A stretch of DNA of 63,981 bases, filler included, from Octopus bimaculoides (GCF_001194135.2; 5 parts of 5 records of this genome joined end to end with filler, not necessarily neighbours in it); one strand, 5' to 3'; counted from the first letter of the whole stretch, positions 40,362 through 62,542 are shown. Numbers and translations are program-made. Notes: generated by a model not told the origin, from the sequence alone.

Positions 40362-41188
40362 ACTTTTTTGTTGAAATATTGGTCCATCGTAACACAAAGA
40401 AATAGGTTTACAAACAAGAATAATGATAACTGGATACCTTGTTAAATTTGGATTTTCAATGAGTGGAGCACAAATATATGTTTGAAGTTATTGTCATATC
40501 AATTAGCAAGAGAATAATTGAGACACTTACCAATTAAGAGAAGCAGAATAAACGCAGTAATTTTCATATTGATTTTTCCTTTTTACAGCCGATTCGTTTT
40601 GGTACATCAGTCTTAAATGTGTCTTACTTTGTTTTGAAATATAACGCATCAGATGTTGCATCTTGGACGTTTATTTATTATGAACTCTTTAAATATTTAT
40701 TCTACACGATGAAATATCGTGTTTGCACGTCAGCTATTTAGAATTCATATGTATAAGAAGAAACGCTTCTATAGATTTTGTCTTTTAACATATGTATTAA
40801 ATAAAACGTTAATGCCCAGCTTGTACCTCCAATGCAAAGGCATACACGAGGTCATACGCACAATACACATTGTTTCATATTATCCATCTTTTTTAGGTTA
40901 GGTTCGTGGCCCTGCACGACTTATGCAATTGGTTCTGTTTCTGGATTACCGTTAATGATTAATGACTAAGGAAGATTGATACCTCTCTCAACGAAACCGT
41001 ATATGGCATGATCGGGCATTCTTTTAGGATATATTACTGATAAATTGATGTTTATTGAATCTATACTCTGAATTTTAGGTTTCTTCGGTTTTTAATACAC
41101 ACACAACTGCTACATATCTGTTTGAAAGGAATCTTTGAGAGGAATGTGACAAAGCCAGTTAGGCTGTTGAAGTGTGTTGAAGTATGTT

Positions 41189-41268
<80 letters not shown>

Positions 41269-41289
41269 CAGACACGCACGTATTTATAT

Positions 41290-42582: not shown

Positions 42583-44384
42583 NNNNNNNNNNNNNNNNNN
42601 NNNNNNNNNNNNNNNNNNNNNNNNNNNNNNNNNNNNNNNNNNNNNNNNNNNNNNNNNNNNNNNNNNNNNNNNNNNNNNNNNNNNNNNNNNNNNNNNNNNN
42701 NNNNNNNNNNNNNNNNNNNNNNNNNNNNNNNNNNNNNNNNNNNNNNNNNNNNNNNNNNNNNNNNNNNNNNNNNNNNNNNNNNNNNNNNNNNNNNNNNNNN
42801 NNNNNNNNNNNNNNNNNNNNNNNNNNNNNNNNNNNNNNNNNNNNNNNNNNNNNNNNNNNNNNNNNNNNNNNNNNNNNNNNNNNNNNNNNNNNNNNNNNNN
42901 NNNNNNNNNNNNNNNNNNNNNNNNNNNNNNNNNNNNNNNNNNNNNNNNNNNNNNNNNNNNNNNNNNNNNNNNNNNNNNNNNNNNNNNNNNNATATATATA
43001 TATATATATATATATACATTTCAGTATTTTCTAACGAGCGGCTGTGCAGTTCTCCAGTTGTATAGTACCAATGAAGGTATTCTTTTAAAGCATATCGAGT
43101 TTCTTTCATTATTTATCCTATACTTCGAGCCGATTCCACGAAATATCTTATTTCAGGGTTTCTTTATTGTCATGCCATGTAAAATCTTTGGTACACTTTC
43201 TCTCTCATTTCATCCTTTATGTGTATGTTTCTTTTCCAGTTTATGTTTCTAACGACGCATACACATCAACATTGACAAGAGTGGAATTTTGTTAGAAAAA
43301 CAGGTAGACAATACATTTTATTAAATTATGTCTTTCTCGGTATAAATTTGAGATGTGTAACGAATTACGCAAACGGCTGAAAAGATACAAACGGTGAAAA
43401 CTTACAATTTTACAAATACGCAGAAGTGAAGTTTCTTCTGTTAGCAACTTTAATAAATGCCACCAATTGAATAAGTTTATATCTTCAAAACTACTACATT
43501 CACACAATTATACATATATTTGTATTTTTATATACATACACGTTCATATATATATATATATATATACACAGTCCTTCAACACACACACACATACACACAT
43601 ATATATATATATACACATTCGCGCACACACATACAGTCGCGGCCACATTAAAAGTATTACAATTGGCATAAAAACGCGTTTATCTACCAATAATATTATC
43701 ACTAACAATATATGAACATTTTCTTGCTTGTGTTTTAACGATTCGATTATTTTGAAAAGTGTCACGTGTAGATATCGATTATTCAAAATTTCAGAACGTG
43801 TGAAACTTATATGAAAGAATAATACTCATTTGTTAATATTTTCCCATTACAACACGTTTTAAATATTTAAGCTTGTTCTACAATTGTGAATTACAGAATA
43901 ACGCATGCATATCATTGTTTCAGCACTGCATTTACTTTTGCATTAATAATTGAACCACGAGTGAATGAAGGAATACTGCTTGTAAGGAGATCTGGAATGA
44001 GAATTGAAAAAAAGGATATATATATATATACATGAATAAATCTTGAATCCACGTATATTCAAATTAGTTTGACGTGAATTATACAAGAAACTTTTTGATT
44101 ATATTCCTCCTTTCATTACCAAATGTGAGATTTAAAAGATCTGTGACGTACTTGCTGATGTTGATTCGGTTTAAAAGCTAGAAAAATTAAGGCTGTACCA
44201 GGGTGTCACAGACTAGTGACTTCAATGCGGTGCACTTTTCAGAAGAGACACCGGGTTCAAACTTTCAGTAGGAGATGACTAACTTATTTCTTGCTGTTTC
44301 TCTCAGGCGAGGTGTGTTGGTTATGAGGCGAGGCAATCGGTGTTATGTTATAGCTGTTCAATATACAGGACAAATACAAATATT

Positions 44385-44540: not shown

Positions 44541-46275
44541 GGTCCAATACAAATATTACAATAACTTCCTTCACCTTAACGTAACTCTTCAAGTCTTATC
44601 GGAAGGTGTATCACCTTCATTATTAATTTCCCCTTGACAAAATGTTGCGAAACGTACTATGAATTTAACGTCTGCATATTAATGAGATTTCGAATTCCTT
44701 ATTTTAGAGGTATCTTAGTTATTTATATAATAATATCAAAATAATTATGTAATTAGTAATAAGTGTATTGATATTGTAATATTCCCGTAGTCTTTAACTC
44801 GTAAAGATCCCATGTTATTGGACCGCTATGTAATAATAAATTTTTTTAAATGTTTGAATCCGTGTTGCTATGATGTTATTTTAATAATGTCAAAAGCATT
44901 CTGTATTTATATTTATAATAATATTCCTGAAGAAAGTACTGAAGTGAAATGGAATTCGGTCATAGATATTACACTATAAAGAGGTTGCTGGAGGAATTGT
45001 TAGAATGAAATCACTTACCTTAACGCTGGAAGGCTTGCCTAGGTTCTAAAAAGAAATAACATATATCTTGAAAAATAAAGAATTTTACAAACCTGAACTT
45101 AATCTATCTACCCCCCCCCCACATACACATATATATATATATATATTTATGTATGTATTTATATGTATTTATGTATATTCTAAGGAGGTGGATATAAAGT
45201 TTATGATGCTAGATCTCTTAAGAGAAAAATGCAACTATATTAGGTCTTATACTACCTGTAATTCTAGCTCCAGCAATATTGTAGATTCAATAGGAATGCA
45301 TGAAAACATATGCGGCGCTGCTTTTTTGAAAACTATACCTGGAAAATCGATTCTCAGGAATGGCACTAATACTAGAGAGTTATGTTTGCTAAAATTTAAT
45401 TTTTCGTTTAATTTTGAATAGTCTCTTTCTCTTTACAGACAATTAGTTAGGAGGGAGTTCATAAAATGTATTTAATGAATTAACGAACTTCATTGAATTT
45501 CCTAGTGATACATGAGCTTTATAAAAATGGAAGCCTTCTGGCGGCGTTTCGAAATATACACTACACCAGTCACAACCACAAATAACGAAGCGTTTTGTAG
45601 TGACGCCTGGAGCTTTAATTGAAGCCTTTTGTTCGACTTAAAAATTAAGTGTAGTAAATTATCTTGTTTCCGTGTTAAATAAAGCTCACATATATACTTC
45701 ACAGCAGTTATTGTCTGTTCACGAATTTTCATTCACATCTAGATGTATCGATTCGACTCATGATGATAGAAAACATTCTGAAGTGTTTTCTGCTATCAAC
45801 GTCAGCAGTATTATCTAAAACTTGTATGTATGGTATATTGTTTCTGTATTGAAAAGTTAATAGCGATGCAAAAGGATGTCAGTGCTGTCAGGATTAATTA
45901 AATAGTACAGACTGTTTATTTTTCCTACGCATACCTCGCAAACAAATTTAAAATATATCACGAGGATAAAAGTTAAAAGTGATCATTGGTCAAAATTCAA
46001 AGATATTTCAAGGCGAATTCTAAGTCTGAACGGCAAAATACTTCGAGAAATTCTATCAATTTTGTAATGACAAGATAACTTACGACGCATCTATGATGGC
46101 CTTCAAACACTCTATAGCAATAAGGTGTGACGTAATAATAAAAGCATTCCAGAAAACTTTTGTAACCGCTGGAAAAGAAAGTTAATGAGGAAATTCATTT
46201 GCAAGTTAGCCACCGAAATATACAGAACACGGATACGCGCACAAAATGCACACGCAGATAAATACATGAATATAC

Positions 46276-46680: not shown

Positions 46681-48186
46681 TATATTGAGAATATGTTGTC
46701 TATTGACTTTTTATACATGCTAGGCCACTAGTAGTGAAATTTCCACCCCCCCAAAAAAAACAAAAAAAATCACTACCATCTATATATTTTACGTATATAT
46801 ATGTATATCTATAAATTAGATTATGTAAAGGCTTTCAGTTGAGCCATACCTTTCTTAAGTTAGCTGCATTGCTTCAGCTTTCGCATGATATATTGTGGTA
46901 CAGCTGTGGTTGCGTAATGGAAGTCTGACCTCAATTTTATGTCTTGTGTTACAGTCTTTCCCTTCTCGACAGTCCAGATCTCATCTCTACATCTATTGCG
47001 TCTACTGGAAACTCATTGACGAGATCGACGATTGGCAACATTCGAAGAAGCATCGGAAGCTGCGCAAATAAGCAAAAACAGTCTTCACCGATGGATCAAG
47101 CTATTTGTGGCCCGTTAGAAGAGGTGCATTGAAAAGCAAGAAAATTATGCCGATAAATACCATTCGATTCTTTGTAATAAATTATAGAAACAAGATTTTA
47201 TTTAGAAGTTGATAAATTTAGTTGTTATATTAATACTAGTATTTATATGGAACATACTTGCAGTTGCCACTCTTTCTTTTATAGGCATCAAACTCTTTGG
47301 GGCACACGGTTTCTGCTACGCCTTCGCATGCTGTGTCCCAGCCACCGGTTACAACACCTAAAACGTGAAAAATTCCTACTTTATTCTTAAATGCTTCACA
47401 ATAGGGAAATATTACATTGTTAAATACAACTCTGACGAAATAATATGAAGATGATTTACTGCTATTTCCAGTAAATATTAGTACATTGTTGTACCACTAT
47501 CCTACGTTTATATATATCTGTGTGTGTGTGTGTGTGTGCGTGTGTGTGTGTGCGTGTGTATGTGTGTGTGTGTATTTTTGCGCATAATGAAGATGTGAGG
47601 AATGGGCAGATAAACTATTAACATATGTATATCAGAATAGATTTCTAGATAAATTAATAGATAACCAATTAGGTAATGTAATTATCAAAATATCTACTTA
47701 CCAAATATAAGAAGCAAAATATATATGAAGAATGCTATCAAGGTTTTGTCGCCCCTCATATTCCACGTCTGATCATGTATATGTGAATACGTCACATACA
47801 ACATAATTTATATTATGTACTACACATTGATGTAACACCTGCATTTCCTAGAAGAACACTATGTATAAATTTCATTTATGTTATTTTCCCTGCTTTTGTT
47901 TTAATTATTTGACAATTCATATTTTTATGTCTGACAAGTTTTATGTGTATGGAATGATATATTTCAATCACCGTGTATAAATTTTTGCAAGGCCTGCGAC
48001 AATTTCATACTCTCTAAATGCACAAAGCATAGAACTTTGGTAGATGTACCTATTCAAAGGAACGATTTAGTAATATGACAGTATATTATAGTTGAGATAC
48101 ACGAAATTTCAAAAATACATTCAATTTCATGTAATTCAATAAACAGATACGACCAAACCGACGTTACTTAGTACACATTATTTATG

Positions 48187-48302: not shown

Positions 48303-49048
48303 AAACAGAGGGGTTTATCATAGCAGCCCAAGATCAATATCAGAAACAGAGGGGTTTATCATAGCCGCCCAAGATCAATGCCTACCTATACAGAACTACC
48401 AGGCCAACATGTTAAAGAACGGCAGCTCCCCATTATGTCGTATATGCCAACAACAAAATGAGACCATCGATCATGTTGTCTCCATGTGCAGTTTGCTTGC
48501 GCCTACAGAGTATCTCAACAGGCATGATAGAGCTGCACAATACATTCACTGGGTAATTTGCAAAAACCTGGACTTGCCCCATAATAAAAACTGGTGGGAA
48601 CACAAACCACCCTCAGTACTTGAAACTGATCACATCGCACTCCTCTGAAACTTCACCATTCAAACTGACAGGAAGATAAATGCAAATAGGCCAGACATCA
48701 TACTGAAAGACTTCAGACAAAAATCATGCCTCCTCATTGATATGACTATCCCAATCGATATAAACGTATCGGTCAAGACCTACCAAAAACTGAGCAAATA
48801 TAAAGATCTTGAAATAGAAATTAGCAGAATGTGGAATCTGAAGACGAAATCAATACCTATTGCCATAGGTGCCCTGGGAATGACAGCGAAACGGGCTGAT
48901 TACTACTTAGCTCAGATACCAGCAAACCCCAAAATGGCTGAAGTTCAAAAGATAGTGCTCATGGGAACTGCCCATATCCTACATAAAATACTGTCTATAT
49001 GATCTCAAATTTTAAAACAAACACACAAGTTTCTTATGGTTTCTTAAA
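48303..49048 (+). mobile_element. 5'-truncated R4/Dong-like non-LTR retrotransposon: CCHC knuckle plus PD-(D/E)xK endonuclease, one premature stop
   Basis: One frame 48341-49002: ETEGFIIAAQDQ...CRICQQQNETIDHVVSMC...RHD...LL*NFTIQTDRKINANRPDII...IDMTIP...KLSKYKDL...GTAHILHKILSI*. The TGA at 48646-48648 replaces a likely Trp. Confidence 0.9.
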
Positions 49049-50834
49049 NNNNNNNNNNNNNNNNNNNNNNNNNNNNNNNNNNNNNNNNNNNNNNNNNNNN
49101 NNNNNNNNNNNNNNNNNNNNNNNNNNNNNNNNNNNNNNNNNNNNNNNNNNNNNNNNNNNNNNNNNNNNNNNNNNNNNNNNNNNNNNNNNNNNNNNNNNNN
49201 NNNNNNNNNNNNNNNNNNNNNNNNNNNNNNNNNNNNNNNNNNNNNNNNNNNNNNNNNNNNNNNNNNNNNNNNNNNNNNNNNNNNNNNNNNNNNNNNNNNN
49301 NNNNNNNNNNNNNNNNNNNNNNNNNNNNNNNNNNNNNNNNNNNNNNNNNNNNNNNNNNNNNNNNNNNNNNNNNNNNNNNNNNNNNNNNNNNNNNNNNNNN
49401 NNNNNNNNNNNNNNNNNNNNNNNNNNNNNNNNNNNNNNNNNNNNNNNNNNNNNNNNNNNNNNNNNNNNNNNNNNNNNNNNNNNNNNNNNNNNNNNNNNNN
49501 NNNNNNNNNNNNNNNNNNNNNNNNNNNNNNNNNNNNNNNNNNNNNNNNNNNNNNNNNNNNNNNNNNNNNNNNNNNNNNNNNNNNNNNNNNNNNNNNNNNN
49601 NNNNNNNNNNNNNNNNNNNNNNNNNNNNNNNNNNNNNNNNNNNNNNNNNNNNNNNNNNNNNNNNNNNNNNNNNNNNNNNNNNNNNNNNNNNNNNNNNNNN
49701 NNNNNNNNNNNNNNNNNNNNNNNNNNNNNNNNNNNNNNNNNNNNNNNNNNNNNNNNNNNNNNNNNNNNNNNNNNNNNNNNNNNNNNNNNNNNNNNNNNNN
49801 NNNNNNNNNNNNNNNNNNNNNNNNNNNNNNNNNNNNNNNNNNNNNNNNNNNNNNNNNNNNNNNNNNNNNNNNNNNNNNNNNNNNNNNNNNNNNNNNNNNN
49901 NNNNNNNNNNNNNNNNNNNNNNNNNNNNNNNNNNNNNNNNNNNNNNNNNNNNNNNNNNNNNNNNNNNNNNNNNNNNNNNNNNNNNNNNNNNNNNNNNNNN
50001 NNNNNNNATATATATATATATATATATATACCTACGTAGCTATCTCACTCTGTCAGTCTGCTTCTCACTTCATATAAATATATTTGTGTGTGTGTATGTG
50101 TGCGTGTATTTATGGTCGAATGGAGAATCAAATAAAATACGTGTAAATGAACACAGATACCAGGTTTATGCATATATAAACTAAATTTGAGATAATATGA
50201 TTGATAATATTATCTAATTATAGATCTATCCTCTTACTAAATGTTGGAAGCAAAAACAAAATGTTGAATTTTCCGTCATCTTTTCTCATATTCCACAACC
50301 TATATTACAGATGTCGCCTACACAAATATCTTTCTTGCACACTTCTAAATAATGTAACACATGTTTTGCCTAACTTCACACTATGTGTTATCTTAATTTA
50401 TTTGTCTTTTTAATGTCACTGTTGTTGATATCTTATATCTTATATGGTACATCCGACATTTTAAATATATGTATAAATTGATCTATGTGAATTGCAAAAA
50501 AGATATATTTCATATTTCATATAATCTATCATGAAATTCGTGTGATAAGCACTGCAACGATTACATGGCCGTTAAAGGCATAAAGGAGAGAATAATCTCT
50601 GCGGTTTCTGTTGGGAGAGCAACCGATTACATTTTTTTTCTTTCCAGTAGAGCGATTAGAATTGTTTTCTATAGATGATTGGTTCGTGTGGTCTGTTATC
50701 CCCATTGAAGGAATGGTGATGAAGAGACATGTTAAATATGAAACTGAAATATGACGTATTATTTTTAATGTAACTCGGAAACGATTACTATTTCTACTAC
50801 GATAGTACTGTTTGTAAACTATATTGTAGTTGAT

Positions 50835-53600
50835 AGGACATCTGATAAGTACTTCTAAAATCTGTTCATAGATTGTCATATGTGAAAGATGAATTTGTAA
50901 TTGAGACAATATGTGCCAATCTATAAAATAATGAATAGTAAAGCTAAAATATTAAGTAAATATATTCATGTAAGCGCATTTCAAAGTAATATAAGGAAAC
51001 ATAAATATTCTGATTGATATTAAAATCTTTATTTTCAATTATTAGTCACCATTTGGTATTGAAAGTTAAAATTATGGGAAACTTGCAAAACAAATATATA
51101 CGTTTAAGTTTCAGATGCTTAATAATTCCAGGTATTGATATATTTCAAACGTTCAAGACCGAACCATCAAAAATACTAAGTTAATAACGCATGCACATTA
51201 TCATTGCAACCATGTATCTATATTCATTAATGAAACCACACATGCAGAAAGAACAACCGGTATGTAAAAGGTCACCTGTAAAATGAATAGGAAAAAATGT
51301 TAAACATAAACATTGAAAGTAGTGTCATGTGAATTACAGAAGTATGTCGATGTGTATATATTTCTATTTATCAACATTTTTTGTGTTGCACAGTATTTCG
51401 CCGCGGATATTTTAGGTTTGTTGAAGGAATGAGCGACGAACATAAACTACTAAAATGGACCACCAGAAAGATGCCGATGGTGTCAATGACCAGTCTGCAC
51501 TGATTTAGATTTAAATGAAAACAGAAAGAGAATTATTGCGTAGGTAAAAGTTGAGTCTGTGCTACTCTTCTCATGAAATGATAGGGACTATATTGCTTAG
51601 GACTTTTGGCTACTGAATATATATGAAGGTTAACAAATTTACGATGAATGAAATCACATTCAGGAGACCTTTTTTTTTCTACCTTATACAGTACCAGATC
51701 TCTCTATGCAGGGTAAAAATATTTTAATAGGTAGTTCATCTCCTTTCTATATCGATAAATGTGTTAGCATTATTAATGTATTTTTATCGTAGTGATATTC
51801 AATTTCTCATATTCAAATTATTTTGGCAGAACTATCATAATAGTCTATCAATTACAAATGGATATATTAAAATAAATTATATTACTACAGTAATCCCTCA
51901 TAATATCGTGGTTCACCAATCAGAGTTTATTCTTTTAAGATAACGTCGATTCCTCCATGGTGTTGTTTTGCATTTATAATAAAATAAATATGTGCAGATT
52001 ACAAAAGAAAAAAATTAATATACAGTACTGTACTGTTTTTAACTATCTTCATGTTTTGGAACATAACCCTGCGATAGTCGAGGGATTGCTGTCCTCCAAT
52101 TATTGACAAAGCTGTTACACCGCGATGTCATTACTGATGAATATGTGAGAGATCTGCATTCGAGTGAGTGAGTATTGAAAAACACTATTGTAATTAAGAT
52201 TGTAATAAATTGTTTTACATGCGAATACTGGAGTAGATTGGAAATAGAATCAGAGAAAATACAATAATTACTTATGAATGTCTTAACATGAAATCACGTA
52301 CCTTGTCTGGACTTCCATTATACTGAAAGCAAAAAGTGTCATGAATGTGAGAGTGTCACAACAGGGAATTCAATTTATCTGCACAGATATATCTTAATTA
52401 CGATGATATGTTTTCCATCTTACAACGATCGTTATATAAAATATCATCATTATATATTTGAGTGATCAGTAATAACTGAAGCGAAGAACTAATCTTTGTC
52501 GTTACCTGTGTGTTTTAATAATAGTAGTTGATTAAATGCGATGGAATAAAAGTATCACAGATTGTTGGCATTATTTTACCGATTTGCTGACCATTATTTC
52601 GAAGCACAGGAATAATCTGAGTATTGCTAAAATGAAGTATTAAATTACTTTCCGATCGTCAGTTTATAGAAACTAAATTTCAGCGAAATACTATCGTTGA
52701 ATTATATTTAGTAAAACTAATAAAATACATTTTTTTGATTTAGACTCTGTCCTCCCAATAAAATGAAAATTATAAAAAGTTATCCTATAGCATTGTTGTT
52801 GTAATTACGTTACACACCACATAAATCTTCGACACACTCTAATAGCTACTGAATCATTTTGTAAATTCTGCAGTATAATATACTACAAAATGATTCAATG
52901 CAAAATGGAAATTTGAAATATTTTTGAATTCGTTATGACGATATATATTTGATTACGTACCATGTTTATGGAACATATGGCTTCTTTTCTCCTCGTGTTT
53001 ATAACTATACAGACGATATCGAAAGGTTGGCTGTCTATTTATGATGCTTTTATTCTCATTCATGTCTGTCGGTTGCAATCGTTCTCCGTATCAATCATAA
53101 TCTTATATTTTTGGTAACAACAGTATACATTCAGAAGCTATATGTCAGATATTACTGCTATATAAAATGCAATTATAATAGTATCATGTTAATGCGTGCG
53201 ACTGCTATATTCCCCAATTAAACACCAAGCTCCTTGCTTCCAATGTCATTTCACAGACAATTTTTAGATACGATAGAAACGTATTTTTCCGAAGGGAAGC
53301 ATTACTTCGAGGGAGGTCAAATTTAATTTACAGTAGTATTAAATACAATTACAATAATAGTTACAATTAACTTACGCGACACGAGTGAACCACTTTAAAT
53401 AGGTTGTAACAATCCGGTGCAATTTTATTTTCCAAACATATCAATAAGTTTTTGTAGTTCCTGGAAAAACCAAATATCTTTGGGAACATCATTTAAAACA
53501 CGAACATACAATTTCTACGTGTAAACTAAATGAACTATACAGAAACTAAATTCTATTGAATATATATGAATTATAAGACGTGAATATCTCTACTCATGCT
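50835..53600. repeat. diverged tandem segmental duplication, copy 1 (copy 2 about 59788-62320)
   Basis: Colinear blocks throughout, e.g. atctgataagtacttctaaaatct (50840/59794), ttgaaagtagtgtcatgtgaattacaga and cctggaaaaaccaaatat; roughly 70% identity by eye. Confidence 0.9.
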
Positions 53601-53714
53601 ATAGCACGCATAGATACACACACAAACTCTCGCTCTCTTTATCTCTCTCCCACTCAAACGCTCAAACGCACTCACACACAAATGTACACGCACCACATAC
53701 TTATTCGTATGTAA

Positions 53715-53750
<36 letters not shown>

Positions 53751-53856
53751 TCACACCTGCAGTTTTGCTTCTTTTCCACATAAAGTTTTAATTCACCATC
53801 GCAAATTTTCTCTGCTATATGTGTACAACTCTGCCAATTGGGCGCAGTCACTCTAT
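51201..53856 (-). CDS. predicted multi-exon Cys-rich, probably GPI-anchored protein, paralog 1 (exons 53856-53757, 53460-53376, 52322-52302, 51703-51683, 51275-51201; N-terminus not found)
   Basis: Canonical AG/GT at each exon, consistent phases 1-2-0-0-0. Translation xRVTAPNWQSCTHIAEKICDGELKLYVEKKQNCR-NYKNLLICLENKIAPDCYNLFKVVHSCR-YNGSPDK-RDLVLYK-VTFYIPVVLSACVVSLMNIDTWLQ*. Confidence 0.6.
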
Positions 53857-55338
53857 CTGGAATGTAAAAATAAAATCACTTTTTCTTTTTGTCTATGCCT
53901 CTGAACATTTCCATAACCGTAGTAAACTATTTCACAAATTAAATTCATGTATTTAACCATTATACACACAAAAAAACCGATATCGTGGAAACGGAAGTAG
54001 AAGCAGGTGAAGTGCTTGGTTCCATTTATTTTTGGTGATTTGTTTTGATTTTTTGAAAATAGAAGTTATATTTTTTATGCTCGTTCCAATATCTTGTACA
54101 AAATCGACAACGGTTTGATCCAGTCGGATATCCTTAGTATTATAGCTATACAGGCCGTTTTATCAATGACACGCTCTTAATGACATCTAAGCCATAACTC
54201 TGTTACAGTTATTTACAATTGCGCTTCAATAATCAACGGGAATTTTCTACATTGCTTTTACTGTTTCATAGTGTGACGCAAATGAACGGAACAATTGCAT
54301 AGTTAGAATTTATAGCCATAAATTTTGCATGTCAGGTGTCTCGTAAAGATTTGAAGTTTCGGTCTTTTTGAGGGGAATGGGAGAATATTTTTAATGCGGT
54401 TTGTACGATTTTGAGAATTTCATGCCACAATGGGTGTTGTTTTAAAAAGCATTCTCTGTATGGCATTTAGGTATGCAACTAAATGTATGCATTGTGAATA
54501 AGTTATGATAATCTGAAATCTTGATAAACCGAAATTAGTTAATCTTGATAAACCGATTTAAACAGCATCTAAATCTGGTTGCAGAAATCTCAATTAAATC
54601 AGCTGGTATAAATCAAAATGACAGAATATACGTCAATATCTGTTAAACCACAACTCAATCGGGAGCGCGTGCTTCCGTTGTTCTGCAAAAAAAATGTATA
54701 TGCCTGCACTTCCTAAGATTATAAGATTTGGATTTAAGCAGCGTGTTCCAATTATTGGATCAAAGAAATATACGGTGTTATTCTCCTCCGCAGATGCTGC
54801 GTTACTTAGATCCATTAACATATGGGTTAGATTTATCCACGATTCTCAGCTTGATTGTATCTGTTGTGTAGTTGGTCTTCAAACTTAATACGTGACTAAC
54901 CAACACAGTTGCATTACTTTTGTGGCTGTATCGGAAAATAGATAGGGAGTGTGCATAACGTCTTTTGAAACCGCATTACACGATGTACTTCGTCTATTCA
55001 ATTATATCTTGAATGGTTGCTGTTATTTCTGACTGCTGCATGAGGAGTTTTATAATACACACCTGGCAAAGTAGGGAAGCTTCAGAGTCTCGAAAGATAT
55101 TATAACAGAAATACAAGGCACACAAAAAAAAAATGACTGTATTATGTTTCCACTCAGGCACAGGTCAGACTAAAAATATTTTGATACGCTGTGAGCATAT
55201 GAAGAGATGGCGATATTTAAAATTTGTGAGAGAAAAAGAAAGTATCCATTACACTTTCACGGCATATGTACGTCTTCTTGTCTGTCTGTCGTTTTCATTA
55301 TTCTTATGAAGAACGAATGAGATAGATTATCTTATAGG

Positions 55339-55408
<70 letters not shown>

Positions 55409-57400
55409 TATATAAAGGGGAAAAAGATACAGAGAGATAAAAAGAAAGAGAGAAAATGATTAATGATATTTCGATAAATATGTAAGGTGATAAAAAGAAC
55501 GATAAGAATAAATTTTGATGTATTATGATAACTCTACAATTGAAATGCTACAAGGATATATGTCCAGGTTCATAGAATCATTGGTATTTTGATGTTACTA
55601 ACCAAGCTGGTGGAACGCTTAAGATATATACTTACTAACAAGAAGTAAAAAAATGAATAAGTAAAATTTCATCATGCCGTATTAATAAATATGATCAGTT
55701 AGAAGTCATCTGCAAATAGTTTCATCTTAAATAACTATGAATCATGTAATACATGTTTTGCCTTAAATATAATTATACGTTAACAGTAATTATATTTTTC
55801 GTCCAGCAGTAATATATTTGACATAGAATAATTTATATGTGATTTTTAAAAGAATGTTTGTACATATTCTATTTTTGTTGCGCCATACTGTTTATTAAAA
55901 AATAATTGCTGGGTCAACTCCATCACATTTCAGACATATCATGTACCACGTTTCACTAGCCAGATGTACTATTTGAGTTAGATTTTATAGGAAATGAGAA
56001 AGAGATCCTCAAAAGTTTGTGGTTGATTGTATTTCCCAAACCTAAATTTCCGAGATCTTTCGTCTTTTCATCGGAAACGGACATGAACAGTATTCCTCTA
56101 TTTGGTCGGCTTTAATAAAGATATATANNNNNNNNNNTATATATATGTTGTGTCTAGGGAGAGTCATATTGTCTTAATTTTACTAACACAGTCGCCGATG
56201 TGCAAATCGTACAGGTGAGCGTGTTAGTTAGTAAGGCATTAAGTCATTATGGCTCTCCCCAGAGACAATATAATTTTCTTTGACCCCTGGGAGCCACCAC
56301 AGTATCTGCCCGTTTAATGTATCCCTCCGCACTCATATTAATATATGTGCATATGTTTATATGTATAGATATATGTGTGTGCGTGTCAGTAGCTATGGTA
56401 TGTACATATCAAAATGTGTGCTCAATACATAATTGATGAATAAGATATATTAATATCTTAACAATTCTTCAAGGCGACCAAATACAGGAAATGTGTTCAT
56501 CTCCATTCCCGATGAAAAGACGAGATTCTTGTGGCATTCAGAAAAAATGTATTGAAAAGAAAAACATAAATTTCCTGTTTGCTACTCTTGCTTCACAACT
56601 TTTAAATGATTATCGCATGTGGGCCAGCCTTGTATATTTGTGATCATAAATATTGTGGAATAAATTATGAATATCAAGGAGAGGTACAAACGGCGTAGTA
56701 GGAAAGGAAATGGAGCATATATGTATTGCGTTCGCGTAAGCGCACCAATTTGTACATTCAGCTATACTCTTTTACTCTTTTACTTGTTTCAGTCTTTTGA
56801 CTGTGGCCATGCTGGAGCACCGCCTTTAGTCGAACAAATCGACCACAGGACTTATTCTTTGTAAGCCTAGTACTTACTCTATCGGTCTCTTTGCCGAACC
56901 GCTAAGTGACGGGGACGTAAACACACCAGCATCGGTTGCCAATCAATGTTGGGGGGACAAACACAGACACACACACACACACATATATACATACATATAT
57001 ACAACGGGCTTCTTTCAGTTTNNNNNNNNNNNNNNNNNNNNNNNNNNNNNNNNNNNNNNNNNNNNNNNNNNNNNNNNNNNNNNNNNNNNNNNNNNNNNNN
57101 NNNNNNNNNNNNNNNNNNNNNNNNNNNNNNNNNNNNNNNNNNNNNNNNNNNNNNNNNNNNNNNNNNNNNNNNNNNNNNNNNNNNNNNNNNNNNNNNNNNN
57201 NNNNNNNNNNNNNNNNNNNNNNNNNNNNNNNNNNNNNNNNNNNNNNNNNNNNNNNNNNNNNNNNNNNNNNNNNNNNNNNNNNNNNNNNNNNNNNNNNNNN
57301 NNNNNNNNNNNNNNNNNNNNNNNNNNNNNNNNNNNNNNNNNNNNNNNNNNNNNNNNNNNNNNNNNNNNNNNNNNNNNNNNNNNNNNNNNNNNNNATATAT

Positions 57401-57570
57401 ATATGGGAGAATATACGAAAAAACAACAACAGGCGAGAACAGGTGGTGTAAATAACAAAAGGATGTATTAGTATGACGCTCGGGAATACGGAAAGTCTTT
57501 GACGTTTCGAGCTACGCTCTTCAACAGAAAGAATACGGAGACAAGGAGAAAAACACGGAGAAAAAAAATT
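57401..57570 (-). mobile_element. second copy of hammerhead-bearing repeat (motif 57496-57532)
   Basis: Motif identical to 37875-37911. Confidence 0.65.
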
Positions 57571-57899
57571 GAATAGTGTTCAGTCAACGGTCAATCATAA
57601 TAATGGCTGACCATAACAATGGCTGACCGGAAGTTAAAAATTCTTTTTGCAGGAGAGCTAATGAAAGGGGGAGATAACAAACGGTGATCGAAGAACGAGG
57701 GGCTGTGTGTGGGAGATAGAATGCTGGTGATCTTGACGTATGTAGTGTGAAAATGGGGAAGGGAGAAAGGAGTTGGTCAGTTGTAGTGTGTGCGTGGTGT
57801 NNNNNNNNNNTGATCTTGACGTATGTAGTGTGAAAATGGGGAAGGGAGAAAGGAGTTGGTCAGTTGTAGTGTGTGCGTGGTGTGATGCGAGGGTATTGG

Positions 57900-58626
57900 T
57901 GTGGTGTGATGTGAGGGTGTTGGGAGGTGGGGAAGGCATGGGTGGCGTAGAGGTAGGGGTATGTAGGTAGGGTGGGGTATGTGGGTAGGTGTGGGTGGTG
58001 GATGTAAGTAATTGGATGGGGTGGAGTGGGAAGGTAGCGTAGGAGTGTGTTGGGGTGTGGTGGGATGAGCTTATGAGGGGTGTTGACGATGAAGGCGGAC
58101 GGGGAAGGCGGATGTAAGAGAGGGGGAAGATGGGTATGGGAGGGGAGAGAAAGAGAGGAAGAGAGGAGAGAGGGTGGGTATAAGAGAGGGAAGGTGGATT
58201 GAGAGAGGGGGATTGTGGGTATGGGGAGAGAAAGAGGGGGAAGGTGGGTATGGGGGGAGAAAAGAGGAAGAGAAAGAGAGTGAGAGAGAAGAGATTGAGA
58301 GAGAGGGAAGAGGGGTATGGGCGGAGAAAGAGAGGAAGAGAAAGAGAGTGAGAGAGAAGAGAGTGAGAGCGAGGGATGGAGAGAAGAGAGTGAGAGAGTA
58401 AGGGTGAGAGAGTAAGAGAGTAAGAGTGTAGAGAGTAAGAGTGAGAGAGAGTGAGAGAGAGGGAAAGAAAGAAGAGAGTGAGAGAGTAAGGGTGAGAGAG
58501 TAAGAGTGTAGAGAGTAAGAGTGAGAGAGGGGGAGTATGAGAGAAGAGAGTGAGAGAGAGTAAGAGAGAGGAGAGAAAGATTAGGGGTGAAGAGAAGTGG
58601 GAGTGAAGAGAAGTAGGAAGAGAAGT
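57900..58626. repeat. G/GT-rich then GA-rich low-complexity tract
   Basis: Strong purine bias with internal GAGAGTAA repeats. Confidence 0.9.
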
Positions 58627-60168
58627 ANNNNNNNNNNNNNNNNNNNNNNNNNNNNNNNNNNNNNNNNNNNNNNNNNNNNNNNNNNNNNNNNNNNNNNNNN
58701 NNNNNNNNNNNNNNNNNNNNNNNNNNNNNNNNNNNNNNNNNNNNNNNNNNNNNNNNNNNNNNNNNNNNNNNNNNNNNNNNNNNNNNNNNNNNNNNNNNNN
58801 NNNNNNNNNNNNNNNNNNNNNNNNNNNNNNNNNNNNNNNNNNNNNNNNNNNNNNNNNNNNNNNNNNNNNNNNNNNNNNNNNNNNNNNNNNNNNNNNNNNN
58901 NNNNNNNNNNNNNNNNNNNNNNNNNNNNNNNNNNNNNNNNNNNNNNNNNNNNNNNNNNNNNNNNNNNNNNNNNNNNNNNNNNNNNNNNNNNNNNNNNNNG
59001 AGAGACGGGTGGTAGGAGGGAGGGTGGGGGAGAGAGACAGGAGGAGGGGGTTAGATGAAGAGGGGAGGGGAGTTGAGCCCATGTGACGCAATATATGCAA
59101 GTTCTCGTCAATAAGTATCCACACTGTTGCCATAGTAATAAAGCAAAATCAGGCACAATAAACCCACTTGAAAAAGATTGAGTATGAACTCTTCTTTGCA
59201 CGAGGACTACGTATAGTGCATGATTGTTGCACTGACCATGACAGCGAATATTGTCTTGGACATACCTGTTCACAGGTCCACACAACGTTGCAGAAAAAGT
59301 AAGGAGAGAAGTGTCTGAGTCGCACAAAATTGTATAAGTGGTTCAGATGTTTCCATGTTGGCCGAAATATGCCGATATTGACGACGTTCTGGGAGACTCG
59401 CAACCTGAAAACTGAGAAAAACATCGCACAGATGCGTACAACTATGAAGGGAAATGTTTGAATAACCACCAGTGAATTATCAGAGGATGTGCAATTTCGT
59501 TACGGTTCAGTTCAGTGCATTATCGCGGTTGTCACGGTTGATGTCCTCTGTATTGCTGGTGTAAAATTTTCTGGTCAACGTGTACTCTATATTACGATGC
59601 AAACATTCTTGTTGGCATTAAATAAAATTGAAGTAAAACGGCAGTCGTAGAACTTAAATGCTACTTATGTTTATATTTTATAAGTACGCCGCATCATTGA
59701 TTCACTTATTAACCGAATCTATAGTTGAATTGTATTTTGTATGTTCGTATCTAAGTGTTCAATGCTGTTAATTTATAATATAATGTACAGGATATCTGAT
59801 AAGTACTTCTAAAATCTATTTCGACATTGTTAGTTATTAAGCATGAATATGTAATTGAGATGAAATTGTGCATATCTACAAAATTAGGAATAAACTGGTT
59901 AAAAAGTCAAACAAAAGTATTAATCTAAGCACATTTTAAAATAACATAACAAATCATAAATATTCAGATTGATATTAAAATCTTTATTTTCATTTGTAAT
60001 CACTATTTCATATCGAATATGAAATTTATGGGAAATATTCAAATCAAATATATATGTTTACATTTCAGATGTTTAATTATTCCTAGTACTGATACATTTC
60101 AAATGTTCAAGACCGAATCATTGAAAAGATTTATTTAACACATTTAAATTATCATTGCATTCATGCAT

Positions 60169-62191
60169 CTATGTAAATAATGAAGCCAGAAGTGCAGAAA
60201 GTATTGCTGGTGAGAGAATAGCCACCTGCAAAATGAATAGGAATATATATTAGACATAAATATTGAAAGTAGTGTCATGTGAATTACAGATGTGTGTCAA
60301 TGTGAATTACAGATGTGTGTCAATGTGAATATATTTCTATTTATTAAAAGTTTTTCTTTTTCTTACAGAACATAAGAATGCGGATTATTTTGGTTTATTG
60401 AAAACAGGCAGTGAACTGAAACAAATATGCAAGACGACCACTAAGATACTGATGCCGTCCACGACGAGTTTTCACTGCTTTACATTTAGAGGAAAACAAA
60501 GAGAGAATTATAATGTAGGTGAAGGTGCAATCTTAGCTATTCGGCTCACGAAGAGATAGGAACTATGTTGCGTAACAGTTTTGGCTGCGTACCGCTATTA
60601 CGGGACTTTCCAAAAGTTTTCATAAATGCAATCTCTTTAAGGAGAGCCGTTTGTGCTAACCTTATATAGCACCACCAGTTTCTTTGCAGGGTAAAATTAT
60701 TTTAATAAGTATTGTACTCTTTCTGTATCTTGATAAACGCATTAGAATAGTTGAAACATGTATGTCACAGAGATACTGAATTCTTCATCATATTCTAATT
60801 ATTTTTGCAGAGCTATCATAATATCCCATCAATTACATATGGATATATTACAATTTATACTCTCATTATTGTCAAAGTTTTTAGGCCGTGGTATCATTAC
60901 TGAAGAATATGTAATGAATCTGTAGTACAGTGTGTATTTTTATACATGTTATTGTAATTATGGTTGTAATAAGTTTTATTATATGTAAATACTGAAGCAG
61001 ATTGGATGTGGAATCAACGATAATACAATAATTGCTATACAGCTCATAGCATAAAATTGCTTACCTCATGTCGACTGCCAGCGGTCTAAAAAACAAAACA
61101 AAAAAAAACGAAGAACAATAATTATATCAGGAAAGTGCCAAAACAGCGAATTTATTTTATCTTCACAAATATATGTTAGGTAATATGGATTCCATCTCAC
61201 AAAGATCGTTATATTTTTGGTGGTCAGTGATAACTGAACAGAACTAATCTTTAAAGTTACCTGTGTGCATTAGTAATTGTAGTTGATTAAATGTGATGTA
61301 ATCAAAGTATCACAAGCTGGGAAATTTATTTTACCGATGTGCTGACCAGAATATCGAAATACACTGATAATCCGAATATTGCCAAAACGAAGTATATTAT
61401 ATTATATTCTTTCATATTTTCAACCGTGAATAACTATTATTTTATTTTTCATCCGATAATGAAACTAAACTTCAGCCAATGACTGTCGTCAAATTATATT
61501 AAGTAAAACCTATCATAAATATTTGTTTATCCAGGCGCGTCCTCCCAGTAAAATGAGAATTATGTGAAGTTACTTTACTCCATTGTGGTTGTTCTTAAGT
61601 TATAGACCGCATGAACATAGGACGCAAAATGTACTCCGAAAGAATTCAATGAAAAATGGGCATTGAAAATATTTTTGGATTGTTATGACTATATATATTT
61701 GACGGCGTAGCATGTTCATCGAAAATCTGCTTGCCTTGCTCCTAGTGTTTATCTTCTATGTAGAATGTGTCAAAATGTATGTTTATTTAAGATATCTATA
61801 TTTACAAACAACTTTGTCGGTTATAATTGTTCTCTATATCAATGTTAACCTCATAGTTTGCCATAACAGGAGTATACATGGTCAGACCATATAGTAGATA
61901 TTAGTACTATATCATAACAAATTTAAAGAATGTGACTGTTATATTCCCCAAGTAAACGCTGTGTTTGCCATGTGCAATGATATTCCACACTCACTTTTAG
62001 ATACAAAATAACAGTGCTTTCGGAGGAAAGCTATTCTCTGATAGAGATCAAATTTAATTTAATACAGTGACAAAGACAAATGCAATAGGAATTACAAATA
62101 GCTTACGAGGCACGAGTGTTTCTCTTTAAATATTTCGTAACAATCCGGGTCGATTCTAGGTGTCAGACATAAGAATAACTGTTTGTAGTAC
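60169..62191 (-). CDS. predicted paralog 2 (exons 62191-62107, 61085-61065, 60681-60661, 60225-60169; upstream exons not found, possibly in gap)
   Basis: Same exon sizes (85, 21, 21) and splice positions. Translation YYKQLFLCLTPRIDPDCYEIFKEKHSCL-TAGSRHE-KLVVLYK-VAILSPAILSALLASLFT*. Confidence 0.6.
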
Positions 62192-62542
62192 CTGGAAAAA
62201 CCAAATATATTTAAAAATGAACTTTCAAATTTTACGTAGAAACTAATCGATTTGTGTAAATTCAATTCGATGTATCCAAAATTCACAAATCTTAATACGA
62301 GTATATTTCTACTCATCTTCCTTTACTATTCTCCCCGCCACACACACATACATACACACACATGCTCTCACAAACACAAACATACAAACACAAACACGCA
62401 CGCACACATACAGAGACATGCATATATATATATATATATATANNNNNNNNNNNNNNNNNNNNNNNNNNNNNNNNNNNNNNNNNNNNTTAATTAATTAANN
62501 NNNNNNNNNNNNNNNNNNNNNNNNNNNNNNNNNNNNNNNNNN

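What the first reader, a model, noticed from the sequence alone, without database searches (positions are those of the whole stretch)
51201..62191. Tandem paralogs of a hidden minus-strand gene with two 21-nt micro-exons (candidate Cys-rich GPI-anchored protein family)
Seen: two about 2.7-kb segments about 9 kb apart, roughly 70% identical. Both keep minus-strand acceptors and donors around an 85-nt exon (53460-53376 / 62191-62107; three Cys conserved, PDCY..FK..HSC). Both also keep two 21-nt exons (52322-52302 / 61085-61065 and 51703-51683 / 60681-60661) and a hydrophobic terminal exon (from 51275 / 60225). Phases chain without stops in both copies. The first micro-exon body is only 11/21 identical while its AG, GT and pyrimidine tract persist, which suggests selection on splicing with a variable payload. 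Paralog 1 has a further 100-nt Cys exon (53856-53757) in matching phase. Inference: NGS/AGS, then a spacer, then a hydrophobic tail fits a GPI signal. Symmetric micro-exons could be skipped to tune stalk length, reminiscent of schistosome micro-exon genes. Substitutions in the 85-nt exon are mostly non-synonymous, which fits either rapid evolution or drift. I do not recognise the family.
Basis: partly seen in the sequence, partly recalled or inferred. Interest (0 to 1): 0.78.

Follow-up and report, generated by a model that had tools for sequence, protein, structure and literature searches.

The report
Unannotated octopus six-cysteine surface-protein gene array
The flagged repeat is real and belongs to a tandem row of at least four small, apparently unannotated octopus genes, each predicted to make a tiny six-cysteine protein tethered to the cell surface by a lipid (GPI) anchor; this is a new gene family of a familiar type, and whether it is expressed is untested.

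Summary
Two ~2.7-kb segments (50815-53737 and 59769-62442) are same-strand copies. Every claimed minus-strand exon has AG/GT at the stated coordinates and the frames chain.

Comparing only those two copies gives an ambiguous answer. Exons are no better conserved than introns (71% vs 76%) and dN/dS is about 1. The conserved exon chain is improbable by chance at roughly the 1% level.

A third, much older paralog (P0, 47759-43932, minus strand) decides the question. It has no detectable DNA similarity to the other two but the same six-exon build: a phase-1 signal-peptide exon, Cys exons of exactly 100 and 85 nt in the same phases with all six Cys in place, two symmetric micro-exons (27 and 18 nt), and a hydrophobic last exon. 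BLASTP of P0 against P1 gives E = 2e-17 across all six exons. A fourth first exon lies at 40567-40531.

The family is therefore a real protein-coding tandem array. The precursors (113-115 aa) read as signal peptide, 58-aa six-Cys domain, and GPI-attachment signal. The micro-exons encode the ω-site and the spacer.

No relative was found in the protein collections, Pfam or PDB. Transcription, GPI anchoring and micro-exon skipping are untested.

The parts
40531..40567 (-). Paralog P-1, exon 1 only (MKITAFILLLLI + 1 nt, phase 1, donor TTG|gtaagt). The rest of the gene lies beyond the left edge of the piece.
   Evidence: It has the same phase and donor context as the first exons of P0 and P1, and 15/19 nt identical to the end of P0 exon 1. 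It lies 7.2 kb from P0 exon 1, which is the array period.
47702..47759 (-). P0 exon 1 (58 nt): MRGDKTLIAFFIYILLLIF, the n- and h-regions of the signal peptide. Phase-1 donor TTG|gtaagt.
   Evidence: The collinear BLASTP alignment with P1 begins in this exon.
47258..47357 (-). P0 100-nt Cys exon (ttttag|GT...CAA|gtatgt): (G)VVTG|GWDTACEGVAETVCPKEFDAYKRKSGNC, phase 1 to 2.
   Evidence: Apart from P1's own exon, it is the only open AG|100|GT segment in the piece with Cys at all three P1 positions.
46084..46168 (-). P0 85-nt Cys exon (ttttccag|C...GTC|gtaagt): (N)GYKSFLECFYYYVTPYCYRVFEGHHRCV, phase 2 to 0.
   Evidence: Nine of 28 residues are invariant in P0, P1 and P2.
45019..45045 (-). P0 micro-exon 1 (27 nt, NLGKPSSVK), with a strong acceptor (tttctttttag) and donor (AAG|gtaagt), phase 0 to 0. 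Holds the predicted ω-site region.
   Evidence: It is one of only two loci of symmetric small exons found downstream of the P0 85-nt exon. The BLASTP alignment with P1 runs through it.
44615..44632 (-). P0 micro-exon 2 (18 nt, GKLIMK; an alternative acceptor at 44656 would give 42 nt), phase 0 to 0. Predicted spacer. This is the least certain exon of the P0 model.
   Evidence: aligned with RDLVLYK of P1.
43932..43991 (-). P0 terminal coding exon: ISLQAVFLHSLVVQLLMQK*, the hydrophobic end of the predicted GPI signal.
   Evidence: A 16-nt motif, ATATGCATGCGTTATT, lies 19 nt after the stop and is shared 15/16 with P1.
55636..55675 (-). P1 exon 1 (40 nt): MMKFYLFIFLLLV + 1 nt, phase 1, donor TTA|gtaagt.
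   Evidence: Weak on its own, because signal-peptide-like starts occur at about 0.3 per kb. Corroborated by the homologous first exons of P0 and P-1.
53757..53856 (-). P1 100-nt Cys exon: (N)RVTA|PNWQSCTHIAEKICDGELKLYVEKKQNC, phase 1 to 2.
53376..53460 (-). P1 85-nt Cys exon: (R)NYKNLLICLENKIAPDCYNLFKVVHSCR, phase 2 to 0.
52302..52322 (-). P1 micro-exon 1 (21 nt, YNGSPDK). Holds the predicted ω-site N-G-S.
51683..51703 (-). P1 micro-exon 2 (21 nt, RDLVLYK). Predicted spacer. Its donor is weak (AAG|gtagaa).
51201..51275 (-). P1 terminal coding exon: VTFYIPVVLSACVVSLMNIDTWLQ*.
   Evidence: Hydrophobicity retention test.
51011..51038 (-). P1 3' UTR block, a 26-nt stretch identical in P2. It contains AATAAA (51033-51028) about 170 nt after the stop. 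Predicted poly(A) signal.
62107..62191 (-). P2 85-nt Cys exon: YYKQLFLCLTPRIDPDCYEIFKEKHSCL. The upstream exons lie beyond the right edge of the piece.
61065..61085 (-). P2 micro-exon 1 (21 nt, TAGSRHE). Predicted ω-site A-G-S.
60661..60681 (-). P2 micro-exon 2 (21 nt, KLVVLYK). It has the weakest splice sites of the set (caaag|AA, AAG|gttagc).
60169..60225 (-). P2 terminal coding exon: VAILSPAILSALLASLFT*.
   Evidence: A 1-nt indel relative to P1 moves the stop earlier.
59983..59988 (-). P2 AATAAA, inside the same perfectly conserved 26-nt block (59992-59967).
50815..53737 (.). Copy 1 of the young duplicated segment, as far as it can be compared before copy 2 runs off the piece.
59769..62442 (.). 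Copy 2 of the young duplicated segment.

Best explanation
The piece is octopod DNA and holds a head-to-tail array of at least four small genes on the minus strand, spaced 7.2-9 kb apart. I call them P-1, P0, P1 and P2. P-1 has only its first exon in the piece. P0 and P1 are complete. P2 has only its last four exons in the piece. The finding covers P1 and P2.

Each gene has six short exons.
- Exon 1, ending in phase 1, encodes the start of a signal peptide.
- A 100-nt and an 85-nt exon encode the signal-peptide cleavage region (VTA|P in P1, VTG|G in P0) and a ~58-aa domain with six cysteines spaced C-7-C-13-C-8-C-8-C-9-C.
- Two symmetric micro-exons follow (21+21 nt in P1 and P2, 27+18 nt in P0), then a last exon. 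Together these three encode a C-terminal GPI-attachment signal: the first micro-exon carries the small ω-site residues (N-G-S, A-G-S, N-L-G), the second carries most of the roughly 10-residue spacer, and the last exon carries the 17-19-residue hydrophobic stretch.

Inferred mechanism: the precursor enters the ER, the signal peptide is removed, three disulfides form, GPI transamidase replaces the C-terminal signal with a GPI anchor, and a ~58-residue disulfide-bonded mini-protein is displayed on the cell surface.

The family evolves fast outside a fixed framework of Cys, aromatic and Pro residues. P1 and P2 come from a more recent duplication (about 24-30% DNA divergence). P0 is much older (47% nucleotide identity in the Cys exons).

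Shown here: the exon structure, the reading frames, and protein-level conservation among paralogs. Inferred: transcription, secretion, GPI anchoring, the fold and the biological role.
For: (1) P0 has no blastn-detectable similarity to P1 or P2. It nevertheless carries exons of exactly 100 and 85 nt with canonical AG/GT and the same phases. Its translation aligns to P1 without a gap, 21/61 identical including 6/6 Cys, at 47% nucleotide identity.
(2) Across the whole piece and both strands there are 23 open AG|100|GT and 22 open AG|85|GT segments. Only those of P0, P1 and P2 have Cys at all three P1 positions.
(3) Full-length spliced P0 against P1 gives BLASTP E = 2e-17, 31% identity over 107 aa, collinear from the signal peptide to the tail with 2 gaps.
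(4) Three homologous first exons exist (40567, 47759, 55675). All are phase 1 and all have a gtaagt donor.
(5) Site-specific constraint: 9 of the 10 P0=P1 identities in the 85-nt exon fall on positions that are also conserved between P1 and P2 (hypergeometric P = 0.005; excluding Cys, P = 0.03).
(6) P1 against P2. A conserved in-phase chain of three internal exons arises in 0.13% of null replicates built from real octopus DNA and in 0.27% of replicates where copy 1 drifts neutrally. Across thresholds a fair figure is about 1%. Under drift, the tail stays hydrophobic with P~0.01, and the three Cys plus the open frame are kept with P~0.03.
(7) An AATAAA lies inside a 26-nt perfectly conserved block about 170 nt after the stop in both P1 and P2.
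(8) The C-termini fit the published definition of a GPI signal: small ω and ω+2 residues, about 10 hydrophilic residues, then about 20 hydrophobic ones (PMC7125958).
(9) Octopod origin: the LINE tail at 48409-49002 has its best hits in Octopus bimaculoides UniRef proteins, at 79% identity.
Against: - No transcript evidence could be obtained.
- No deposited protein contains the P1 or P2 exons, although the O. bimaculoides proteome is in the database. None of 18 spliced or read-through models exists as an exact sequence.
- Between P1 and P2, dN/dS is 1.03, differences are spread 18/14/14 over the three codon positions, and exon identity (71%) is not above that of aligned non-exon columns (76%). 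One or both young copies could therefore be decaying.
- The splice sites of micro-exon 2 are weak, especially in P2.
- The acceptors of micro-exon 1 do not fall in the same alignment column in P1 and P2.
- P1's hydrophobic stretch is followed by 7 polar residues (NIDTWLQ), which is atypical for a GPI signal.
Confidence: 0.78

Rival explanations
1. The family is real, but P1 and/or P2 (the copies in the finding) are recently dead or dying pseudogenes that drift neutrally. Only older members such as P0 would be functional.
For: dN/dS between P1 and P2 is 1.03 and differences are spread evenly over the codon positions. Exons are no better conserved than introns. The intron ends at the claimed acceptors are not specially conserved. 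Micro-exon 2 has weak sites in P2. A 1-nt indel alters the C-terminal end. Neither copy is present in any protein collection.
Against: Both copies keep every splice dinucleotide, the reading frame and an open ORF at 24-30% divergence, which happens in only 0.27% of neutral simulations starting from copy 1. The three Cys plus the open frame (P~0.03) and the tail's hydrophobicity (P~0.01) are retained. The positions conserved between P1 and P2 are the ones also conserved in P0. This pattern fits a fixed framework with a freely or positively evolving surface better than it fits decay.
Confidence: 0.12
2. The genes are real but the product is not GPI-anchored. The C-terminal hydrophobic stretch would act as a single-pass or tail-type membrane anchor, or it would be removed so that the protein is secreted.
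For: P1 ends with 7 polar residues after the hydrophobic stretch, and P0's tail contains Q, H and Q. No GPI predictor was run. The ω assignment in P0 (N-L-G) is shifted by one residue relative to P1 and P2.
Against: The hydrophobic stretches are 17-19 residues long with no basic stop-transfer cluster or real cytoplasmic tail. Small ω and ω+2 residues sit 10-12 residues upstream in all three paralogs, with an invariant Gly. P2's C-terminus is a textbook GPI signal by the published criteria.
Confidence: 0.2
3. There is no gene. The splice-like sites, open frames and Cys are chance features of a neutrally evolving AT-rich segmental duplication, picked out by eye.
For: Conservation is flat across 'exons' and 'introns'. 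dN/dS is about 1. The chain statistic depends on thresholds and rises to P = 0.2 at the loosest setting. The gap-free state of the 85-nt exon is part of a 188-column gap-free block that extends into the intron. No database relatives were found.
Against: The P0 paralog reproduces exon lengths, phases, all six Cys, the signal peptide, the micro-exons and the tail without any DNA-level similarity. Chance cannot plausibly produce this.
Confidence: 0.02
4. This is a schistosome-MEG-like system. The symmetric micro-exons would be alternatively included to generate protein variants, for example to switch the GPI ω-site on and off or to change the length of the linker.
For: Both micro-exons are multiples of 3 and phase 0-0 in all three paralogs (21+21, 21+21, 27+18 nt), so skipping one or both keeps the frame. 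Micro-exon 1 carries the predicted ω-site, so its skipping would plausibly change the anchoring. Micro-exon 2 has weak sites, as cassette exons often do.
Against: There is no expression data. Any exon lying between two phase-0 introns is necessarily a multiple of 3, so the symmetry is inherited rather than independent evidence. Only 12-13% of the coding sequence is in micro-exons, against 10-20 micro-exons per gene in MEGs. There is no sequence relationship to MEGs.
Confidence: 0.1

Closest known systems
Ly6/uPAR (LU, three-finger) family of small GPI-anchored proteins
   Same: The precursor is about 110 aa, with an N-terminal signal peptide, one small disulfide-rich domain and a C-terminal GPI signal. 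From my own knowledge: the genes are small and multi-exon with a phase-1 intron after the signal peptide, they sit in tandem clusters, and they diverge rapidly outside the Cys framework.
   Different: No match to PF00021 or any related Pfam model at E<=10. There are six Cys, not 8-10. The spacing C-7-C-13-C-8-C-8-C-9-C lacks the N-terminal CxxC and the C-terminal CCxxxxCN hallmark (from my own knowledge). The GPI signal is split over three exons, two of them micro-exons.
Schistosoma micro-exon genes (MEGs)
   Same: The products are secreted and have a signal peptide. The exons are short, symmetric and multiples of 3. The genes are lineage-restricted, fast-evolving and hard for annotators to find (PMC4350168, seen).
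   Different: MEGs have 10-20 exons of 6-81 bp that make up most of the coding sequence. Here only 2 of 6 exons are micro-exons, and the Cys exons are asymmetric (phases 1 to 2 to 0). There is no sequence similarity. Alternative splicing has not been shown.
Generic GPI-anchored protein precursor (Kinoshita 2020, PMC7125958)
   Same: An N-terminal signal peptide. Small ω and ω+2 residues. About 10 hydrophilic and then 17-19 hydrophobic C-terminal residues.
   Different: P1 carries 7 extra polar residues after the hydrophobic stretch. Anchoring is predicted by rule only.
Venom- and toxin-type accelerated gene families (conotoxins, three-finger toxins)
   Same: A conserved signal peptide, Cys framework, introns and UTR, with a hypervariable mature sequence. 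Here exon identity is 71%, non-exon identity is 76%, and the 3' UTR reaches 80-85%. The comparison with toxin families rests on my own knowledge.
   Different: There is no evidence of venom or secretory-gland expression. A GPI signal argues for a cell-surface product rather than a secreted toxin.

Membership tests
GPI-anchored protein precursor | N-terminal ER signal peptide | tested here: met
   Judged by inspection only. P1: MMK-FYLFIFLLLV-NRVTA|P. P0: MRGDK-TLIAFFIYILLLIF-GVVTG|G. Both have n-, h- and c-regions and small residues at -3 and -1. P-1 begins MKITAFILLLLI. No SignalP run was possible.
GPI-anchored protein precursor | Small ω residue and small ω+2 residue | tested here: met
   P1 has N-G-S, P2 has A-G-S and P0 has N-L-G. 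The Gly is invariant in the three-way alignment. Criteria taken from PMC7125958.
GPI-anchored protein precursor | About 10 hydrophilic residues followed by about 20 hydrophobic residues running to the C-terminus | tested here: inconclusive
   Counted from ω+1, the spacer is 12-14 residues and the hydrophobic stretch 17-19. P2 fits cleanly. P1 has 7 polar residues after the hydrophobic stretch, and P0's stretch contains Q, H and Q. Hydrophobicity is retained beyond the drift expectation, P~0.01.
GPI-anchored protein precursor | GPI actually attached (PI-PLC sensitivity, ω-site mass spectrometry) | not testable with these tools
   This needs an experiment.
Ly6/uPAR (LU domain) | Match to the LU-domain profile, with 8-10 Cys in the three-finger spacing including CCxxxxCN | tested here: not met
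   No Pfam family at E<=10 for P1, P2 or P0 apart from noise. Six Cys, and no CC or CN motif.
Ly6/uPAR (LU domain) | Three-finger beta fold | not testable with these tools
   Structure prediction refuses spliced peptides. PDB sequence and profile searches found nothing.
Schistosome micro-exon genes | Most of the coding sequence built from 10-20 symmetric exons of 6-81 bp | tested here: not met
   Two micro-exons out of six exons. They hold 42 of 342 coding nt in P1 and 45 of 348 in P0. Definition.
Schistosome micro-exon genes | [quoted passage not shown] | not testable with these tools
   No RNA data were available. Skipping would keep the reading frame.
Twin CX9C / CHCH proteins | Two CX9C motifs in a helical hairpin, no signal peptide, mitochondrial intermembrane space | tested here: not met
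   Only a sub-threshold Pfam CX9C hit (E = 0.074, 13.4 bits against a cut-off of 26.4). The domain has one C-x9-C, and a signal peptide is present.

The most novel reading that the evidence does not exclude
This is a cephalopod-restricted, rapidly diversifying family of GPI-anchored six-Cys mini-proteins with a disulfide fold unrelated to any known domain. The GPI-attachment signal is modular at the exon level: ω-site, spacer and hydrophobic tail each lie on their own exon. Regulated skipping of the ω-site micro-exon would then switch the product between GPI-anchored and non-anchored forms.
Probability: 0.12. Interest if true: 0.62.

Novelty: new variant of a known kind. Interest (0 to 1): 0.42.

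Why it matters
It adds an apparently unannotated, lineage-restricted gene family to an octopus genome. The case also shows how such genes escape annotation: the exons are tiny (18-100 nt), there are no homologues, and the young copies have dN/dS near 1.

Small GPI-anchored Cys-rich proteins such as the Ly6/uPAR family act as modulators of receptors and ion channels, in gamete recognition and in immunity. A fast-evolving octopus family of this general build is therefore a reasonable candidate for cell-surface recognition functions in an animal known for lineage-specific expansions of surface molecules.

The exon-level partition of the GPI signal makes one hypothesis directly testable, namely that micro-exon skipping controls anchoring.

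Methodologically, the pairwise comparison of the young duplicates was ambiguous. The older paralog settled the matter.

Tried and rejected
- Pfam on P1, P2 and P0 peptides and on every stop-free stretch of at least 38 aa in the tandem unit, both strands: nothing.
- PDB by sequence and by a three-sequence profile: nothing meaningful.
- Word-indexed search of 5.8 billion protein clusters with P1 and with P2: no hits.
Two hits, both artefacts of tandem-repeat proteins that match 14-19 profile positions many times over.
- Exact look-up of 18 spliced or read-through models: none deposited.
- The look-up of encoding contigs with two window ORFs, to reach another assembly of this locus: not on record.
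- Rfam: only microsatellite 'miRNA' noise far below the gathering scores. No tRNAs.
- Transposon hypothesis for the 2.7-kb unit, rejected. It has exactly two copies in the piece, placed head to tail, with no TE domain. A gene structure explains it.
- Exon-specific sequence conservation and conservation of intron ends: not present.
- My first acceptor PWM (16-nt pyrimidine tract) scored true-looking sites poorly, so I replaced it with a simple pyrimidine count.
- A terminal-exon candidate at 45636 in P0 (SNKRLQ...LFVVVTGVVYISKRRQK...): set aside, because the exon at 43991 aligns with the P1 and P2 tails.
- Literature searches found no description of such a family or of micro-exon genes in cephalopods.

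Full report
**What the piece is.** The usable piece is 40225-62442. It is 66% A+T, about 10% N, and full of microsatellites. A LINE-tail remnant at 48409-49002 has its best protein hits in Octopus bimaculoides UniRef entries (79%, 71% and 69% identity). The DNA is therefore octopod, and that species' published proteome is present in the protein collection I searched.

**Checking the observation.**
- The two segments are real, same-strand copies. blastn aligns 50835-51873 to 59789-60854 (72.5%) and 52099-53481 to 60865-62212 (66.9%).
- A gapped alignment runs from 53737/62442 down to 50808/59765.
- Copy 2 begins at 59769, which is 50815 + 8954, so the units abut head to tail. Copy 2 is cut by the piece edge just before the position of the 100-nt exon.
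- Every claimed exon has AG and GT where stated, and the frames chain.
- None of the four assembly gaps inside the finding touches an exon. All lie in the spacer between the two genes. The 10-N gap at 57801-57810 is an unmerged 73-nt contig overlap.

**The two young copies alone give an ambiguous picture.** Several results argue against a gene.
- Identity is flat at about 70% along the whole unit.
- In ungapped columns the claimed exons are 71% identical and the remainder 76%. The best-conserved blocks (80-85%) lie in introns and in the 3' flank.
- dN/dS is 1.03, and differences are spread 18/14/14 over the codon positions.
- The 20 nt upstream of the claimed acceptors are no better conserved (15-18 of 20) than those upstream of other conserved AG look-alikes (12-17).
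- The gap-free state of the 85-nt exon is part of a 188-column gap-free block that extends into the intron.

Other results argue for a gene.
- With thresholds set at the weakest claimed site, the minus strand yields exactly the three claimed internal exons, and the plus strand yields one.
- When real octopus DNA from this piece is 'duplicated' in silico with the observed mismatch and gap pattern, a conserved in-phase chain of at least 3 exons appears in 8 of 6000 replicates. When real copy 1 drifts neutrally, it appears in 8 of 3000.
- This statistic is threshold-sensitive, ranging from 0.0008 to 0.2. I take about 1% as a fair value.
- Independently, with 18 of 51 nt changed, the tail stays fully hydrophobic with P~0.01 under drift. 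With 23 of 84 nt changed, the three Cys and the open frame survive with P~0.03.

**The decisive evidence: an older paralog.** A tblastn of the spliced peptides against the piece hit one locus to the left of the duplication, on the same strand and in the same exon order. blastn had seen no DNA similarity there. I call this gene P0.
- It has a 100-nt exon (47357-47258, ttttag|GT...CAA|gtatgt) and an 85-nt exon (46168-46084, ttttccag|C...GTC|gtaagt).
- Their lengths and phases (1 to 2 to 0) are exactly those of P1.
- The translation aligns to P1 without a gap, 21/61 identical with all six Cys in place, at only 47% nucleotide identity.
- Among all 23 open AG|100|GT and 22 open AG|85|GT segments on both strands of the piece, only those of P0, P1 and P2 have Cys at all three P1 positions.
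- P0 also has the remaining parts of the gene: a phase-1 first exon (47759-47702, MRGDKTLIAFFIYILLLIF, TTG|gtaagt); a 27-nt micro-exon with strong sites (45045-45019, NLGKPSSVK); an 18-nt micro-exon (44632-44615, GKLIMK); and a hydrophobic last exon (43991-43932, ISLQAVFLHSLVVQLLMQK*).
- The spliced P0 and P1 proteins align collinearly from signal peptide to tail (BLASTP E = 2e-17, 31% over 107 aa, 2 gaps).
- A fourth homologous first exon lies at 40567-40531 (MKITAFILLLLI, phase 1, TTG|gtaagt). Its gene continues beyond the left edge.

These paralogs also validate the P1 first exon I had found at 55675-55636 (MMKFYLFIFLLLV, TTA|gtaagt, phase 1). Alone it was weak evidence, because signal-peptide-like starts occur at about 0.3 per kb.

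**Gene models.**
- P1 (113 aa): MMKFYLFIFLLLVNRVTAPNWQSCTHIAEKICDGELKLYVEKKQNCRNYKNLLICLENKIAPDCYNLFKVVHSCRYNGSPDKRDLVLYKVTFYIPVVLSACVVSLMNIDTWLQ.
- P0 (115 aa): MRGDKTLIAFFIYILLLIFGVVTGGWDTACEGVAETVCPKEFDAYKRKSGNCNGYKSFLECFYYYVTPYCYRVFEGHHRCVNLGKPSSVKGKLIMKISLQAVFLHSLVVQLLMQK.
- P2 (partial): ...YYKQLFLCLTPRIDPDCYEIFKEKHSCLTAGSRHEKLVVLYKVAILSPAILSALLASLFT.
- Introns are 296-1779 nt.
- P1 and P2 share an AATAAA inside a perfectly conserved 26-nt block about 170 nt after the stop.

**What is under selection.** In the 85-nt exon, nine of 28 residues are invariant in all three paralogs (.YK....C......P.CY..F...H.C.). Nine of the ten P0=P1 identities fall on positions that are also conserved between P1 and P2 (P = 0.005; excluding Cys, P = 0.03). 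So the overall dN/dS of about 1 between P1 and P2 hides two classes of site: a fixed framework, and a surface that evolves freely or under positive selection. Splitting the sites after the fact is biased, so I do not claim positive selection.

**How it most likely works (inferred).** The precursor has a canonical signal peptide with n-, h- and c-regions, cleaved after VTA in P1 and VTG in P0. A ~58-aa domain follows, with Cys spacing C-7-C-13-C-8-C-8-C-9-C. The C-terminus fits the published definition of a GPI-attachment signal: small ω and ω+2 residues, about 10 hydrophilic residues, then about 20 hydrophobic ones (PMC7125958).
- The ω candidates are N-G-S (P1), A-G-S (P2) and N-L-G (P0), with an invariant Gly.
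- The hydrophobic stretches are 17-19 residues long.
- The three parts of the signal are split by exon. Micro-exon 1 carries the ω-site, micro-exon 2 carries most of the spacer, and the last exon carries the hydrophobic stretch.

The predicted product is a small, disulfide-bonded, GPI-anchored surface protein. P1's seven polar C-terminal residues and the Q, H and Q in P0's tail leave room for a different kind of membrane anchoring.

**Comparison with known families.**
- No relative was found for P1 or P2 among 5.8 billion protein clusters.
- The 85-nt-exon profile found none among 1.84 billion representatives; its two hits were repeat-protein artefacts.
- Pfam gave nothing and neither did PDB.
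- None of 18 alternative models is deposited as an exact sequence.
- In general build the family resembles Ly6/uPAR genes, but it fails their defining Cys pattern and profile.
- It is not a schistosome-type micro-exon gene. Only 2 of 6 exons (12-13% of the coding sequence) are micro-exons, against 10-20 per gene in MEGs.
- Skipping either micro-exon would keep the frame. That follows simply from both flanking introns being phase 0, and there are no expression data.

**Limits.**
- Transcription is not shown.
- No signal-peptide predictor, GPI predictor or structure predictor could be applied to the spliced models.

**Verdict.**
- The finding is part of a real, apparently unannotated tandem array of at least four genes for six-Cys, probably GPI-anchored mini-proteins.
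- It is a new sequence family of a familiar kind. It is of moderate interest to cephalopod genomics and to people who annotate small fast-evolving genes, but it is not a new kind of system.

Noticed in passing
window 48409-49002 (+): Remnant of a non-LTR retrotransposon C-terminus. It gives a weak Pfam zf-RVT hit (E = 0.0011, below the cut-off). Its best protein hits are Octopus bimaculoides UniRef entries at 79%, 71% and 69% identity, followed by many marine invertebrates at 45-59%. It lies in the spacer between P0 and P1 and was used to identify the host lineage.
   Followed up: yes
window 57728-57800 and 57811-57883: An exact 73-nt direct repeat flanks the 10-N gap at 57801-57810. The two contig ends overlap, so the gap and one repeat copy are assembly artefacts. 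The true sequence is 83 nt shorter.
   Followed up: yes
window 43897-43912 (P0) and 51183-51198 (P1), minus strand: A 16-nt motif just after the stop codon, AT(A/G)TGCATGCGTTATT, is shared 15/16 between the otherwise unalignable P0 and P1 3' UTRs. It contains TGCATG, which I recall as the Rbfox-type hexamer. P2 has diverged at this spot. It may be a conserved 3'-UTR regulatory element.
   Followed up: partly
window 51011-51186 and 59967-60138: The best-conserved stretch of the young duplication (80-85%, including a perfect 26-mer around AATAAA) is the 3' UTR rather than the coding sequence. This pattern is typical of fast-evolving secreted-protein families.
   Followed up: partly
window 59150-59650 (+): By eye, this is a decayed mariner/Tc1-like transposase N-terminus (KLYKWFRCFHVGRN...TSELSEDVQFRYGSVQ) next to the boundary between the two duplication units. 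Pfam did not confirm it; the only hit was a spurious Phage_spike match at E = 0.019.
   Followed up: partly
window 41174-41539 (+): By eye, an integrase-core-like fragment (VIVVDTCTKWPEV) preceded by a (CA)n run. There was no Pfam hit at E<=10, so it is unconfirmed.
   Followed up: partly
window 58100-58600: GA-rich degenerate tandem repeats with a period of about 29 nt border the gap at 58628-58999. On the minus strand they give long spurious Ser/Leu/Pro-rich ORFs (for example 57658-59133).
   Followed up: no
window 51692-51712 (+): The only conserved exon-like AG...GT segment on the plus strand of the duplication is a 21-nt stretch antisense to P1 micro-exon 2. It is most likely a chance by-product of that exon's conserved ends.
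   Followed up: no
window 56060-56118 and 56465-56523: A 59-nt inverted repeat (83% complementary) straddles the 10-N gap at 56128-56137, in the spacer upstream of P1.
   Followed up: no
window 45636-45502 (-): Inside P0 intron 3, an AG-preceded open frame encodes SNKRLQLKLQASLQNASLFVVVTGVVYISKRRQKASIFIKLMYH*. It has a short hydrophobic stretch followed by basic residues, so it could be an alternative terminal exon giving a differently anchored isoform, or it could be nothing.
   Followed up: partly
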